From NCBI GenBank assembly GCA_033442325.1, contig JAWQFM010000005.1, positions 312,564-376,563 on the forward strand: a stretch of DNA of 64,000 nucleotides. The letters are read 5' to 3'. The notes beneath the pieces are model-generated. The model saw nothing but the letters and a program-made list of their open reading frames with translations, made no database searches and was not told the DNA's origin. This document shows, piece after piece, positions 45,963-54,091 of this stretch (position 1 is its first letter; each line of letters opens with the position of its first letter). A program made the translations under genes and the position numbers. The stretch comes from Salpingoeca rosetta (lineage: Eukaryota; Protista; Choanoflagellata).

Positions 45963-48900
45963 ATGTTCCGCCGCAGCCGCAAAACGCTGGAGCGCCAGCC
46001 TGCCCAACGCAGCAGTACCGGTCGCTCCATTCACCGTGATTTCACGCACCAGCGTTCACTTGACTCTGCCGTCATCGCTGGACCAGAGTACTTGCAGAAA
46101 TGGGTGCGTGTGTCTGTGTTTGTCTGCGGTTGTGTTTGTGTATGTGTGTTTGTGCGTGCGTATGTGTGCAAGTGTGTATGTGTGTGCATGTGTTTTTTTT
46201 TCTCTCTCTCTGTCGCTCTGTCTCTCTGTGTCTGTCTCTGTTTCTCTCTGTCTGTCTCTGTTTCTCTCTGTCTCTCTCTGTCTCTCTCTGTCTCTCTCTG
46301 TCTCTCTCTGTCTCTCTCTGTCTCTCTTCTCTGGCCTGTGTGTCTGTCTGAGAAGGCGACCGCCCGCTGGGACTGCGAGCTGGTGCTACAACGTGTCCGG
46401 CATGCGTGTGCACGGACGCATAACTACCTCACACGCCACGATTCGCATCGACTTCTTGCAGGCGCTGGCGCTGTTGTCCAAGGTCGAGAAGCCCGCGTTT
46501 CTGCTGTGCAGCAAATTCTTGCTCACAGTGGTGCACAACATCGTCCAGCACCCTGAGAAGCAGCTGTACCGGCGCATGCAGACGTCCTCAACCGTGAGTA
46601 CAGCAAAGACCGAAGATCTTGGGTTACGCATGCTCCTGTGTGTGTATGTGTGTGTGTGTGTGTGTATGTGTGTGTGAGCATGGCTGCTTACATGCATGTA
46701 CGTGGGTGGTTTTATGTGCACACACACACACAAATACGCACCTAACACAAGCACACACGCACGCACGCCACGACCGCCAGACTGTGAAGCGAGCGCTGGA
46801 AACAGAGGCGGCACAGCGTCTGTTGGACTTCATTGGACTGCAGCGCCAGGGGGACGCGTACATTCTCGACGGAGACCTGTCCCACGATGACCAGCAGCGA
46901 CTAGAGTGGCTGGAGGAGGCCCTCATCAGCACGCGCAAGAAGCTGTTTGTGCTTGAGGCCTGGGAGCTCTTTGTTCAGGACATTCAGCTCGACCACCGCA
47001 TTGGCGCTGGAAGGTGTGTGTGTGTGTGTGTGTGTGTGTGTGTGTGTGTGTGCGAGGGGGGTGGGTCTGTCTGTCTGCCTCTCTGCGTGATTGCTTGACG
47101 TCTATGTGCGTGGAGCGTTAGCACATGCACACGCACACACCCTCACATCGCAACCTTGTGTGCTGCAGCTTTGGCGATGTGTACATTGGCACCCACAAAG
47201 GGCAGCAAGTGGCCATCAAGACGCTCAAAGCGAACGTGCGCCCGGACTTGCGTGAAACCTTCTTCCAGGAGGCAGACATCATGAAGTGAGCAGTTGTGTA
47301 GTCACACGTGTATGTGTGTGTGTGTGGTGAAGTGTGATGCAGTGTGGTGTAGTGTGTGAAAAGCTGCACGCGCAAACACACACACGCATGTTTCTTGTTC
47401 ACACGCACACATTCCAACACAACCACGCACTCCCACCGCTGCTGCCGCAGGACCTTCAAGCATCCCAATGTGCTCGGTCTGATTGGCGTTGTGATGCGCA
47501 AGAAACCCAACGTCATTGTCATGCCGCTCATGGACACAAACTTGCAAGACGTGCTGCGCGGCGAAGAGGGCTCTCTCGGGTGGGTAGCGCTCTGTAGTGG
47601 GCTCTTGTGTGTGTGTGTGTGTGTGTGTGTGTGTGCGTGTGTGTGTGTGTGTGTGTGTCTGTCTGTCTGTCTGTCTGTCTGTCTGTCTGTGTGTGCCTGT
47701 CCGTATGCCTTTCTGCACATGTGTATCTGTCGATGCGTCTGCCCATTCACCGTCTTTCTTTCACCTGTCAGGGAATCGCTGACGAAAGCGATGGAGGTGG
47801 CTGCTGGTCTCGAGTACATCCACCACCAGAACATTCTCCACTGCGACCTCGCCGCCAGAAACATCCTCGTCTCAAAGGCGGGACAGGTCAGACGCGACGT
47901 GTTGACGTGATGTAGCGGCCCGTGTCGATGTGTGTGTGTATGCATGCGCACTACCGTGTTACTCATGCTCACTCACTCACCCACTCACTCACTCACCCAC
48001 TCACTCACTCACTCACTCACTGACTCACTGACTCACTCACTCACTCACTCACTCACTCACATAATGACTCACTCACTCACGTACACACACACTCACACAC
48101 TCACACACTCACTCACTCACTCACTCACTCACTCACTCACTCACTCACTCACTCACTCACTCACTCACTCACTCACTCACTCACTCACTCGGCTCAACGC
48201 CACACCTGACATCCCTTCGCCTCCACCAACCACCACCGCCAGCTCAAGATTGCCGACTTTGGCCTTGCGCGCGCCGCGGATTCGCCCGACTGCGACGTGT
48301 CCGATCGCACGTTCCCAATCCCCGTCCGCTGGTCCGCGCCAGAGGTCTGGCAGACACGCATCCTCTCCAAGAAGACAGACATCTGGTGAGCACGCGCGCC
48401 CGCGGGATTGGCCGTGGCAGGAGGAGAAGAAGGGAGAAGAAGGGGGAGGCGGTGTGTGTAGGTGTATGTACGTGTGTGTATGTGTGTGTGTGTGTGTTAG
48501 TGCGGGCTTGGAGGTGTCATCCAACCTTACTTTCCTTCTTCGTTTTGCTTCCCTTCTTTCCTGTCCACTGCGTGCGTGCGGTTGTGCCCCTCCCCCTTGG
48601 CACACCTTCGTTTCCTCTCTTGTGTTCACACCATTGCGTGATGCTAACAGCTGGATCCTTGTTCATGTGCGCTGTTTGCTGTCAGGTCATATGGTGTTGT
48701 GTTCTTTGAGATCATGACCGCTGGTGCCGTCCCGTACGTGCGATGGAAGAACGCACAAGTCAAGCAGGAGGTGCTTGCATGCATCGTCTCTGTGTATGTG
48801 TGTGTGTGTGTGTGTCTATATGACTATATATCTCTGTGTCTGTGTCTGTGTTTGTGCTTGTCTGTGTGTGCCTGATTGCATCATCGTCACTCCTTCTTCC

Positions 48901-51900: not shown

Positions 51901-54091
51901 GTCATCATCATCATCATCATCATCATCATCATCATCATCATCATCGTCATCATCATCATCATCATCATCATCATCATCATCATCATCATCATCACCCTCA
52001 TCATCATCATCATCATCATCATCATCATCATCATCATCATCATCATCATCATCATCATCATCACCATCACCCTCATTCCTATCAATCACTATCATCATCA
52101 CATCACTGCCATCGTGACAGGTTGAGACGGAGGGTGCGCTGGCGCGCGACGTGTACGATGCAATGCAGTCCACAGAGTCTGCAGGATCAAACCTCATCTG
52201 CTTCCTTGACCAATACGACCTCAGCCAAGGTGCGTGCCGGCCCATGTGTATCTGCCTGTCTGCCTGTATCTCTGCGTGTATGTGTGTGTTTGTCTCTCTG
52301 TGTCTCTGTCTGTGCGTCTGTCTATGTGTGCGGGTCTAGGTGTGTGTGTGTGTGAGACATGCTTGTCTGCGAGCTTGCGAATCCCTCTCCCCTTTCCGCT
52401 TCATCCACTAAATGCCCCTCCCTACCACCCTCGCGTTGTCTGCTCGCTAGTCCCTGGCGAGGACCCGTGGCTTGGGGGAATTCGCAGTGCCATCCTCAGC
52501 GCAAAGGTGCCCATATACACATCATGTACACATGCACATGAACACACACTCACACTCACGCACTCACTCTCTCTCTCATACACATACATGAGTACATGTA
52601 CACGTTATCCATTCCATTCTACCTTCACTGTTTGCGTACCATCTCCACCTTTCTTCTCCTTCGCTTCTCTGTTTCTCCTTTGCACTTTGCACAGGTGTTT
52701 CTCGTGCTCATCTCTGAGAACGCTCTGACACTCACGCAAACGGACGACTTTGACGGCACGCTCGTCATGCAACTTGCGGTGCGATGATGATGACTGTGGT
52801 GATGGTGATGATGGTGGTGGCGATGACGACTACTACGTCCCTGTAGAGGAGAAGGGGGGGGTGGTTGTTGTCATGGTGTTGGACACACATCGCGACAACT
52901 TTGTGCTTGTTCCAGACGCTTTTTCTCACGCCACGCACACAATTTCATGCACACACTGCATACACATGCAAACACAAACACGCATGCACACCCCATATGC
53001 ACAGGCTGCTGTCGACCTGCACAAGAAGAATCAGATTCAACTCGTGCCGGTGTTTGTCGGACGAAACATCCAAATCAACCACCCGTCAAAACCAAACAAG
53101 GTCTTCACCGTCTATGACAGTTATGATCTCTTTGACGCTTCGGATTTCCCAGACGACCCCGTCGCCGAGGACTGGCAGGTGTGTCTGTGTCTGTGTCTGT
53201 GTGTCTGTGCCTGTGTGTGTCTCTGTGTGTGTGTGTGTCTGTCTGTCTGTCTGTGTCTGTGTCTCTGTCTGTGTCTGTGTCTGTGCCTGTGTGCGTGTGT
53301 GTTTGTGTGACTGTTTATCTGTGTGTGTGTCTGTGTGCCCATTCCTTCCCCCACATTGATGCGATGTTTTCGTCCGTTGCGCCAATCACCAGATGACGAC
53401 CCGGCAGGTTCTGGATTACATCTTCTCACTCCGAGACGAAGGTGCAGTGGCAGAAGCGAATGTTCAATTCATTATTCACTCACACACACATTCACACACG
53501 CACGCGCACACACATTCACTCACACTCACACACACAAAACACACACACACATTCGCTCATTCACTCACGTCTTCCACTCTGTGCGTGTGTAAATGTGTGC
53601 GTATGTGTGTCAGGATTTGTCCTCAACCCGGAAGAGGACGACATTCAGTCGCTCTGCAATTCAATCGTCGAAAAGTGCTTGCAGAGGGATCCACAACTCC
53701 TGGTGCGTGCACACACAAAACCACACACACACACACGTACACCACGCGCTTGTAGACATGCGTATGTCGCCAGGTGTCTGCATGTTTGTGTCTTGTATGA
53801 TTGATCGGTATGCCTCATCTGGCTTGCACACACACACACACACACACACACAAAACACACACACACACAAAACACACATAGGAGGCGAACAACACGCAAT
53901 CTGTAACGGGCGGTGATGGCGACAGCGGCAGCACAACGCCGAAGAAAGCAGAGAAGAAACAGCAGCAGCTGTCTGTGCCCACGAGCGAAACACCAGAGAG
54001 CAAACCGCAGTACCTCAGCAGCAGCCACGCAACGCGCATGCGCCTGTCGCGAAGGAGGACCAAGTGGTATCAGGAGGACTCCTCTGCATGA
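45963..54091 (+). CDS. Cytoplasmic tyrosine kinase with PUB-kinase-SH2-TIR architecture, multi-exon
   Basis: PUB-like [18 protein letters not shown]...LLDFIGL; kinase [47 protein letters not shown]; SH2-like [19 protein letters not shown]...[11 protein letters not shown]; [37 protein letters not shown]; TGA 54089-54091. Confidence 0.85.
50075..50200 (+). repeat. 30-bp minisatellite, ~4 copies, starting at a splice donor
   Basis: Unit ggtgtgtttgtatgagtgagcgagcgagtg. Confidence 0.9.
51821..52062 (+). repeat. (CAT)n intronic microsatellite
   Basis: Long CAT/CGT run within an intron of the TIR region. Confidence 0.95.

What the first reader, a model, noticed from the sequence alone, without database searches (positions are those of the whole stretch)
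45963..54091. PUB-tyrosine kinase-SH2-TIR fusion: candidate one-protein innate-immune-like signalling module
Seen: one spliced reading path joins a PUB-like domain (~46462-46880), a tyrosine-kinase-type domain (DLAARN, PVRW), an SH2-like domain (~50730-51360) and a TIR domain (51607-~53700), with no TM helix or signal peptide. Established: PUB domains bind the p97/VCP C-terminus, TIR domains are scaffolds or NADases, and kinase-TIR fusions have been reported in some choanoflagellates. I know no animal protein with all four domains. Inference: it could couple TIR assembly to phosphotyrosine signalling and p97/ubiquitin handling, like a fused MyD88/IRAK/HOIP-type module.
Basis: partly seen in the sequence, partly recalled or inferred. 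Interest (0 to 1): 0.82.

Follow-up and report, generated by a model that had tools for sequence, protein, structure and literature searches.

The report
PUB-kinase-SH2-TIR gene of a choanoflagellate
The four-domain gene is real and made as one mRNA, but it is an already annotated Salpingoeca rosetta tyrosine kinase of the published 'Kinase TIR' class; the only new points are an unreported PUB domain and several missing ligand-binding or catalytic residues.

Summary
A 24-exon gene on the + strand (45963-54091, all introns GT..AG) translates exactly to an 887-aa database protein named 'TK protein kinase [Salpingoeca rosetta]'. RNA contigs from two studies and raw stranded RNA reads join the later kinase exons, SH2, TIR and the stop codon in one open frame.

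Domain evidence:
- **Kinase, SH2, TIR_2:** all pass Pfam's curated cut-offs.
- **PUB:** below the Pfam cut-off, but a family profile hits only PUB domains in the PDB. A confident AlphaFold model superposes on the PNGase and UBXD1 PUB domains.
- **Relatives:** a transcript-derived relative (43% identical) has the same four domains in the same order. A Tara Oceans relative has kinase-SH2-TIR, and a S. urceolata protein has PUB-kinase.

It is not an animal protein and not a new class. Richter et al. 2018 defined choanoflagellate 'Kinase TIRs' and noted SH2 with TIR. I found no paper that mentions the PUB.

Conserved oddities:
- the kinase is non-RD (HCD);
- both phosphotyrosine-binding arginines of the SH2 are replaced;
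- the PUB 'cornerstone' Asn is Ser;
- no catalytic Glu is evident in the TIR.

The most likely function is a soluble scaffold kinase activated by TIR assembly. The MyD88/IRAK/HOIP analogy remains speculation.

The parts
45963..46103 (+). Exon 1 (aa 1-47): start codon, basic N-terminus, first helix of the PUB fold
   Evidence: Exact match to P0012. In-frame stop 30 nt upstream. Not covered by laid reads.
46462..46593 (+). Exon 2 (aa 48-91): PUB domain, first half ([18 protein letters not shown])
   Evidence: Pfam PUB profile positions 3-39, E=1e-4, on the exon alone. Donor GTGAGT at 46594 gives identity to P0012.
46781..47013 (+). Exon 3 (aa 92-169): PUB second half, a long helix, and the start of the kinase (HRIGAG). 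PUB and kinase are joined within one exon.
   Evidence: This was the query that retrieved the relatives.
47169..47285 (+). Exon 4 (aa 169-208): kinase G-loop and VAIK lysine
   Evidence: PK_Tyr_Ser-Thr profile positions 12-55
47451..47579 (+). Exon 5 (aa 208-251): kinase N-lobe and hinge
   Evidence: Profile positions 58-96
47772..47886 (+). Exon 6 (aa 251-289): catalytic loop HCDLAARN (non-RD)
   Evidence: Profile positions 106-138. The loose read ends before 48240 spell this exon's 3' end.
48243..48385 (+). Exon 7 (aa 290-337): DFG and the activation segment PVRWSAPE
   Evidence: Profile positions 142-188. Joint to exon 8 listed for contigs and raw reads.
48686..48770 (+). Exon 8 (aa 337-365): kinase C-lobe
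48950..49069 (+). Exon 9 (aa 366-405): end of the kinase domain
   Evidence: Profile positions 218-255. Joints.
49355..49425 (+). Exon 10 (aa 406-429): linker
   Evidence: Joint 49068->49354. The internal intron 49426-49574 was deduced from 132 nt of contig and the open frame.
49575..49635 (+). Exon 11 (aa 429-449): Ser/Thr-rich linker
49944..50075 (+). Exon 12 (aa 450-493): acidic linker
   Evidence: Joint 49635->49944
50353..50425 (+).
   Evidence: Contig lengths. Pfam SH2 at aa 505-579.
50730..50818 (+). Exon 14 (aa 518-547): SH2 betaB-betaC, FMVHET with His at the FLVRES Arg position
50973..51103 (+). Exon 15 (aa 548-591): SH2 C-terminal half
51337..51406 (+). Exon 16 (aa 591-614): acidic SH2-TIR linker
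   Evidence: Joints 51103->51337 and 51404->51605
51607..51657 (+). Exon 17 (aa 615-631): TIR betaA (HHVFISY)
52121..52229 (+). Exon 18 (aa 632-668): TIR alphaA, betaB and the start of the BB loop
52451..52506 (+). Exon 19 (aa 668-686): BB loop (VPGEDPW) and alphaB
52695..52778 (+). Exon 20 (aa 687-714): TIR betaC and the alphaC region (TLVMQLA, no Glu)
53005..53178 (+). Exon 21 (aa 715-772): TIR betaD plus an inserted beta-hairpin region
53393..53441 (+). Exon 22 (aa 773-789): TIR alphaD
53614..53702 (+). Exon 23 (aa 789-818): TIR betaE and alphaE
53882..54091 (+). Exon 24 (aa 819-887 and the stop): low-complexity tail with a P(Q/H)YL...MRLS.RRR motif shared with P0002. The 3' UTR continues beyond 54100.

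Best explanation
SHOWN: this is the annotated Salpingoeca rosetta gene for an 887-aa soluble protein. Its domain order is PUB (about aa 41-148), tyrosine-kinase-group kinase (159-406), SH2 (505-579) and TIR (about 624-813), and it is made as one mRNA. It belongs to the choanoflagellate 'Kinase TIR' class. A small group of choanoflagellate relatives shares the whole architecture or colinear parts of it.

INFERRED mechanism:
- The TIR shows no evident catalytic Glu. It most likely acts as a homotypic assembly or docking module that brings the protein to other TIR proteins (choanoflagellate TLRs or cytosolic TIR proteins).
- Clustering then switches on the kinase. It keeps the VAIK Lys, the catalytic Asp and DFG, but it is non-RD (HCD), a type of kinase that often does not rely on activation-loop phosphorylation.
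- The PUB supplies a second docking site for a short Tyr-containing PIM-like motif, on p97/VCP or another partner. Phosphorylation of the PIM tyrosine is known to abolish PUB binding, so the attached kinase could release its own PUB partner.
- The SH2 lacks both phosphate-binding arginines. It is more likely a structural or regulatory element, or a reader of something other than canonical phosphotyrosine.
For: Gene model and transcript:
- Exact identity of the spliced translation to P0012, 'TK protein kinase [Salpingoeca rosetta]'.
- One RNA contig in each of two studies, plus stranded raw reads, spans the later kinase exons to the stop, and the frame stays open throughout.

Domains:
- Kinase, SH2 and TIR_2 are above the Pfam cut-offs.
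- PUB: the family profile hits only PNGase and UBXD1 PUB domains in the PDB (best E=6e-6). The AF2 model has pLDDT 87, and its eight best Foldseek matches are all PUB domains (TM 0.73 by target, rmsd 2.9 A).
- TIR: the AF2 model has pLDDT 70, and its best matches are the TIR domains of RPS4, L6, SARM1 and AbTir at E about 1e-6.
- The kinase is nearest to Src, Fes, Eph, EGFR and a protein deposited as 'RTKC8 kinase domain'.

Conservation:
- P0003 (43% identical end to end) has PUB, TK, SH2 and TIR_2. P0002 (63.5%) has TK, SH2 and TIR_2. P0004 has PUB and TK.
- HCD, the SH2 His and the PUB Ser are conserved in all relatives that have the domain.

Literature:
- The Kinase TIR class and its proposed streamlined signalling role: PMC6040629.
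- Phosphorylation of the PIM tyrosine blocks PUB binding: PMC4017264.
- Non-RD kinases correlate with pathogen-recognition signalling and often lack activation-loop autophosphorylation: PMC2553837.
Against: - No functional data exist for any Kinase TIR.
- The PUB scores below Pfam's cut-off. Its PIM pocket lacks the cornerstone Asn (Ser instead) and the Arg that binds the p97 C-terminus, so p97 binding is uncertain.
- The best structural matches of the TIR are NADase-type TIRs. The absence of the catalytic Glu rests on sequence alignment and a pLDDT-70 model. The relative P0003 has a Glu two residues away.
- The BB-loop Pro-Gly is not conserved in P0003.
Confidence: 0.55

Rival explanations
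1. p97/VCP-directed kinase. The PUB docks on the C-terminal tail of the p97 hexamer. The tyrosine kinase phosphorylates the penultimate tyrosine and so exchanges PUB/PUL cofactors. The TIR and SH2 only tune localisation or oligomerisation. The primary role would be proteostasis control, not immune-like signalling.
For: The PUB fold and its profile similarity to the p97-binding PNGase and UBXD1 PUB domains. Asn41- and Tyr51-equivalent residues are kept. PUB-PIM binding is switched off by tyrosine phosphorylation (PMC4017264). The PUB is fused directly to the kinase within one exon.
Against: The cornerstone Asn58 equivalent is Ser. The Arg55 equivalent, which holds the p97 carboxylate, is Gln/Lys/Thr in the three relatives. 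This explanation gives no role to the conserved TIR. The S. rosetta p97 tail was not examined.
Confidence: 0.2
2. Enzymatic TIR effector. The TIR is an NAD+-cleaving enzyme like SARM1, plant TIRs or bacterial Thoeris TIRs. The kinase, SH2 and PUB regulate or are regulated by it.
For: The best structural matches are NADase TIRs: RPS4, L6, SARM1, AbTir and SPARTA. The Atlas lists bacterial Pkinase+TIR_2 and Pkinase+ThsB_TIR clusters among look-alikes (a lead only). P0003 has a Glu near the expected position.
Against: The alphaC helix of the S. rosetta protein (TLVMQLAAAVDLHK) and that of the 63.5%-identical relative contain no Glu. The alignment to the oyster TIR-STING puts hydrophobic residues at the W-x-x-x-E glutamate.
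Confidence: 0.12
3. Annotation or assembly artefact. Two neighbouring genes (PUB-kinase and SH2-TIR) have been read through or merged.
For: A contig spanning two genes does not by itself prove a single transcript (caveat).
Against: The open frame is uninterrupted across all 23 introns. At least three split raw reads in a run support 11 of the 17 junctions between exon 7 and the stop, including those flanking the kinase-SH2 linker and those from SH2 to TIR. A transcript-derived ORF from another species carries all four domains colinearly. PUB and the kinase start share one exon.
Confidence: 0.02

Closest known systems
Choanoflagellate 'Kinase TIRs' (Richter et al. 2018, eLife, PMC6040629)
   Same: A kinase domain plus a TIR domain in one soluble protein without a transmembrane segment, restricted to choanoflagellates. 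SH2 was also reported together with TIR in several choanoflagellates.
   Different: The published definition does not mention a PUB domain or the kinase-then-SH2 order. It also does not mention the non-RD catalytic loop or the degenerate SH2 and PUB pockets described here.
PNGase / UBXD1 / HOIP PUB domains (2HPJ, 2CCQ, 6SAP; PMC4017264)
   Same: Same fold (TM 0.73, 25% identity to mouse PNGase PUB). The Asn41- and Tyr51-equivalent residues are conserved, as is the hydrophobic helix alphaA.
   Different: The cornerstone Asn (PNGase N58 / HOIP N102) is Ser, and the Arg55 equivalent is Gln/Lys/Thr. The domain is attached to a tyrosine kinase rather than to a glycanase, a UBX protein or an RBR ligase. 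It scores below the Pfam cut-off.
Cytoplasmic tyrosine kinases with SH2 (Fes/Fer, Src) and the Shc SH2
   Same: The kinase domain's best solved matches are Src, Fes and Eph. The SH2's best matches are Shc and Fes. The DLAARN and PVRWSAPE signatures are present.
   Different: The SH2 lies C-terminal to the kinase, whereas animal families have it N-terminal. The catalytic loop is HCD, not HRD. SH2 betaB5 Arg is His and alphaA2 Arg is Thr.
MyD88-IRAK Myddosome and HOIP/LUBAC
   Same: A TIR-bearing component, a non-RD kinase and a PUB-bearing component all occur in animal TLR/NF-kB signalling.
   Different: No death domain and no RBR or zinc-finger ligase domain is found. The kinase belongs to the TK group, not the IRAK/TKL group. 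The resemblance is functional analogy only.

Membership tests
Kinase TIR class (PMC6040629) | Protein kinase domain present | tested here: met
   PK_Tyr_Ser-Thr 251 bits and Pkinase 169 bits
Kinase TIR class (PMC6040629) | TIR or TIR_2 domain in the same protein | tested here: met
   TIR_2 34.3 bits against a cut-off of 28. TIR fold by Foldseek. Same mRNA.
Kinase TIR class (PMC6040629) | No transmembrane domain | tested here: met
   The highest 19-residue hydropathy mean is 1.68, inside the TIR core. No hydrophobic N-terminus. No dedicated TM predictor was available.
Kinase TIR class (PMC6040629) | Choanoflagellate origin | tested here: met
   100% identity to a Salpingoeca rosetta protein. 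One relative is a S. urceolata protein; the others are an unnamed EukProt transcript and a Tara Oceans sequence.
PUB domain (PF09409) | Pfam gathering score | tested here: not met
   24.2-27.4 bits against a cut-off of 34.3. P0003 has PF09409 on record.
PUB domain (PF09409) | PUB fold | tested here: met
   AF2 pLDDT 87. The top eight Foldseek matches are PNGase and UBXD1 PUB domains. The profile against the PDB returns only PUB domains.
PUB domain (PF09409) | PIM-pocket residues (PNGase Asn41, Tyr51, Arg55, cornerstone Asn58) | tested here: not met
   Asn41 and Tyr51 equivalents are kept. The Arg55 equivalent is Gln/Lys/Thr and the Asn58 equivalent is Ser in all three relatives (alignments; residue roles from PMC4017264).
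PUB domain (PF09409) | Binds the p97/VCP C-terminal tail | not testable with these tools
   Needs a binding assay. The S. rosetta p97 tail was not examined.
SH2 domain (PF00017) | Pfam gathering score and similarity to solved SH2 domains | tested here: met
   34.8 bits against a cut-off of 21. Shc SH2 E=2.8e-10 and Fes SH2.
SH2 domain (PF00017) | Phosphotyrosine-binding Arg betaB5 (FLVRES) and Arg alphaA2 | tested here: not met
   FMVHET aligns to FLVRES (His for Arg), and Thr aligns to the alphaA2 Arg. Both replacements are conserved in P0002 and P0003.
TIR domain, NADase type (SARM1, plant TIR, bacterial TIR) | TIR fold | tested here: met
   Foldseek matches to RPS4, L6, SARM1 and AbTir at E 1e-6 to 1e-4
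TIR domain, NADase type (SARM1, plant TIR, bacterial TIR) | Catalytic glutamate in the alphaC region | tested here: inconclusive
   No Glu in helix 708-721 (TLVMQLAAAVDLHK) of P0012 or in P0002. P0003 has QYE there. No residue-level structural superposition was available.
Tyrosine kinase (TK) group | DLAARN catalytic loop, P-V-R-W-x-A-P-E motif, VAIK Lys, DFG | tested here: met
   Read directly from the sequence. The nearest solved structures are Src, Fes and Eph.
Tyrosine kinase (TK) group | HRD arginine (RD kinase) | tested here: not met
   HCD in all four relatives
MyD88 / IRAK / HOIP modules | Death domain (MyD88, IRAK) or RBR and zinc fingers (HOIP) | tested here: not met
   The Pfam scan of P0012 at E<=1 lists none of these families

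The most novel reading that the evidence does not exclude
A TIR-triggered 'writer' of the PUB-PIM phospho-switch. TIR assembly activates a tyrosine kinase that its own PUB domain has pre-docked on a PIM-bearing partner (p97/VCP or a deubiquitinase-like protein). The kinase phosphorylates the PIM tyrosine and releases the partner. This would be a one-protein link in a unicellular relative of animals between TIR signalling and p97/ubiquitin handling, comparable to the regulation of animal HOIP-OTULIN/p97.
Probability: 0.12. Interest if true: 0.75.

Novelty: new variant of a known kind. Interest (0 to 1): 0.42.

Why it matters
Choanoflagellate Kinase TIRs have been proposed as a streamlined precursor or alternative to animal TLR-adaptor-kinase cascades, but none has been characterised. 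This member adds a PUB domain, whose known ligands are switched off by tyrosine phosphorylation, directly next to a tyrosine kinase. That gives a concrete, testable hypothesis in a genetically tractable organism (S. rosetta).

The conserved loss of canonical residues in the SH2, PUB and TIR cautions against reading function from domain names. The gene itself and its class are already in public databases and the literature, so the gain is incremental.

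Tried and rejected
- TIR exons scanned one by one against Pfam gave nothing because the pieces are too short. The TIR was only detectable on the full protein.
- My first model used a later exon-2 donor (46648) and gave 905 aa. It was rejected because the GTGAGT donor at 46594 reproduces P0012 exactly and matches the relatives.
- My first guesses for the exons at 49355-49635 and 53005-53441 broke the frame. They were resolved from contig lengths.
- Word-based homologue searches on the N-terminal regions of P0012 and P0003 found only the queries themselves. 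Their candidates are limited to proteins 0.55-1.75 times the query length, so the family's full range remains unknown.
- The exhaustive search with exon 3 gave 7 hits. P0006 and P0007 are not credible relatives.
- The TIR profile and P0003's TIR gave no significant sequence match in the PDB. The catalytic Glu could therefore not be placed by a trusted alignment.
- Manning et al. 2008 (PMC2453073) is not held in the library.
- The odd joints 49865->52273 and 52309->52542 (non-GT..AG, X4 only, microsatellite flanks) were dismissed as repeat artefacts.

Full report
**What is in the sequence**

The region is eukaryotic. It has short exons separated by introns of 149-463 bp that are full of (TG)n, (CA)n and (CT)n microsatellites.

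I picked out coding cores from the three + frames and paired GT/AG sites. I then laid RNA data on 48101-54100. One assembled RNA contig in each of two studies (X4, 3081 nt; X6, 3501 nt) runs colinearly through kinase exon 7 to beyond the stop. Raw reads of two stranded RNA-seq runs (X21, X22) have the first mate on the - strand, which in most stranded libraries means the RNA is the + strand.

- Twelve of the 17 junctions between exon 7 and the stop are listed as GT..AG joints in both contigs. Eleven of them also have at least three split raw reads in a run.
- The other five (introns 10, 12, 13, 21, 23) are not listed. I fixed them from exon lengths in the contig plus the open reading frame.

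The final model has 24 exons from 45963 to 54091, with all 23 introns GT..AG. Its translation is identical, residue for residue, to the database protein P0012 (887 aa), which NCBI and UniRef name 'TK protein kinase [Salpingoeca rosetta]'. The window is therefore S. rosetta, and the gene is already annotated.

Exons 1-6 were not covered by my single reads call. Four things support them:
- the exact match to the annotated protein;
- about 1046 nt of the X4 contig lying upstream of exon 7, against 867 nt of predicted CDS;
- an in-frame stop 30 nt upstream of the ATG;
- relatives that are colinear from their N-termini.

**Domains**

Pfam on P0012:

| Family | Residues | Bits | Curated cut-off |
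|---|---|---|---|
| PK_Tyr_Ser-Thr | 159-406 | 251 | 23.1 |
| SH2 | 505-579 | 34.8 | 21 |
| TIR_2 | 626-757 | 34.3 | 28 |
| PUB | 60-116 | 24-27 | 34.3 |

- **PUB.** It falls below the Pfam cut-off, so I tested it separately. A profile of the N-terminal regions of P0012, P0003, P0004 and P0005 hits only PUB domains in the PDB. These are PNGase (2CCQ E=6e-6, 2HPL, 2HPJ, 2D5U) and then UBXD1. An AlphaFold model of aa 36-150 has pLDDT 87. Its eight best Foldseek matches are PNGase and UBXD1 PUB domains (TM 0.73 by target, rmsd 2.9 A, 25% identity), and SPATA2 and HOIP PUB domains follow. The PUB is real.
- **TIR.** The model of aa 610-830 (pLDDT 70, three-sequence alignment) matches the TIR domains of RPS4, L6, Roq1, SARM1, TIR-1, AbTir and SPARTA at E 1e-6 to 1e-4.
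- **Kinase.** Its closest solved relatives are tyrosine kinases: Src, Fes, Eph, EGFR and a protein deposited as 'RTKC8 kinase domain'.
- **SH2.** It is closest to the Shc and Fes SH2 domains.
- **Membrane topology.** There is no hydrophobic segment outside the TIR core.

**Relatives**

An exhaustive HMMER search with exon 3 (PUB C-terminal half, linker and kinase start) found a small family:

| Protein | Source | Length | Identity to P0012 | Pfam families |
|---|---|---|---|---|
| P0003 | EukProt transcript ORF, marked complete | 853 aa | 43% over aa 23-857 | PUB, TK, SH2, TIR_2 in the same order (PF09409 also on record) |
| P0002 | Tara Oceans metatranscriptome, N-truncated | 836 aa | 63.5% | TK, SH2, TIR_2 |
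| P0004 | Salpingoeca urceolata | 393 aa | 49% | PUB, TK |

The four-domain architecture occurs in S. rosetta and in at least one more distant relative, and partial colinear versions occur in two more. Word-based searches on the N-terminal regions found only the queries themselves. The family looks small, but its range is not mapped.

**Conserved peculiarities**

1. The catalytic loop is HCDLAARN in all four relatives. This makes it a non-RD kinase with an otherwise complete catalytic set ([15 protein letters not shown]). [quoted passage not shown]
2. In the SH2, the FLVRES arginine (betaB5) is His (FMVHET) and the alphaA2 arginine is Thr/Ser, in all three relatives that have the domain. Canonical phosphotyrosine binding is therefore doubtful.
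3. In the PUB, the equivalents of PNGase Asn41 and Tyr51 are kept. Arg55, which binds the p97 carboxy-terminus, is Gln/Lys/Thr. The 'cornerstone' Asn58 (HOIP Asn102, whose N102D mutation abolishes OTULIN binding; PMC4017264) is Ser.
4. In the TIR, the helix where NADase TIRs carry their catalytic Glu reads TLVMQLAAAVDLHK in S. rosetta, with no Glu, and is similar in P0002. P0003 has QYE there. I could not obtain a residue-level structural superposition, so this point is inconclusive and leans towards a non-enzymatic TIR. The BB-loop Pro-Gly is present in S. rosetta but not in P0003.

**How it most likely works**

Shown: one soluble polypeptide carries a PUB, a catalytically equipped TK-group kinase, a degenerate SH2 and a TIR.

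Inferred:
- The TIR mediates homotypic assembly with other TIR proteins. Choanoflagellates encode TLRs, Kinase TLRs, SARM1 and many cytosolic TIR proteins (PMC6040629).
- Proximity activates the non-RD kinase.
- The PUB docks a Tyr-containing PIM-like motif. Phosphorylation of the PIM tyrosine abolishes PUB binding (shown for OTULIN Tyr56 in PMC4017264; for p97 Tyr805 I rely on my own knowledge of Zhao et al. 2007, which that paper cites for the PNGase-p97 structure). The kinase could therefore release or exchange its own PUB partner.
- The SH2 probably has a structural, regulatory or non-canonical role.

Rivals are a dedicated p97-tail kinase, an enzymatic TIR effector, and a merged-gene artefact. 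The artefact is essentially excluded.

**Comparison with what is known**

Richter et al. 2018 defined 'Kinase TIRs' as Pkinase plus TIR without a transmembrane domain, unique to choanoflagellates. They also listed SH2 among the domains found with TIR. This gene meets every defining feature.

Full-text searches found no paper that mentions a PUB domain in such proteins or in a choanoflagellate tyrosine kinase. Manning et al. 2008 could not be read.

No death domain or RBR is present, and the kinase is not IRAK-like.

**Verdict**

This is a variant, with PUB and an atypical SH2, of a known choanoflagellate kinase-TIR kind, in a gene that is already annotated. Interest is moderate. The PUB next to a tyrosine kinase gives a clear experiment, but nothing here overturns current understanding.

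Noticed in passing
window 48240-48385 (exon 7): In the X4 and X6 contig sets, a second record joins exon 7 at 48244 to a different upstream sequence. That sequence ends ...GCAACTGCCTCGTGTCCAAGGAGCTCACAG, which encodes NCLVSKELT, another kinase's subdomain VIb. It could be a paralogous kinase transcript merged at shared k-mers or an alternative 5' exon.
   Followed up: no
window 51830-52110 (inside intron 17): A trinucleotide repeat of about 280 bp reads as poly-His, poly-Ser or poly-Ile in the three + frames and as poly-Met or poly-Asp on the - strand. It has zero RNA depth, so it is intronic and not coding.
   Followed up: partly
window 52301-52700 (introns 18-19): RNA reads lie inside the introns on both strands. 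There are variants at 52556 and 52560 and many loose ends at GA/GT repeats (52340, 52357, 52571). These look like reads from a dispersed repeat, retained introns or an antisense RNA.
   Followed up: no
window 54635-55641, - strand: The convergent downstream neighbour has exons matching the inositol 1,3,4-trisphosphate 5/6-kinase ATP-grasp domain (PF05770; 27 bits and 21 bits). Its 3' end faces the 3' end of the kinase-TIR gene.
   Followed up: partly
window 43749-45677, - strand: The upstream ORFs contain leucine-rich-repeat-like strings (LRELDLRLNPV, IRDLDLSCNAL), but no Pfam family is reported on the unspliced ORFs.
   Followed up: partly
P0012 aa 860-887 and P0002 C-terminus (window 54005-54088): The otherwise low-complexity tail shares a motif, P(Q/H)YL ... 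MRLS(K)RRR, between S. rosetta and the Tara relative. It could be a tyrosine phosphorylation or docking site.
   Followed up: no
ESM Atlas look-alikes of P0012: Bacterial clusters with Pkinase+TIR_2 (80 members) and Pkinase+ThsB_TIR (53 members) appear among the feature-based neighbours. Kinase-TIR fusions therefore also exist in bacteria, perhaps in defence systems (a lead only).
   Followed up: no
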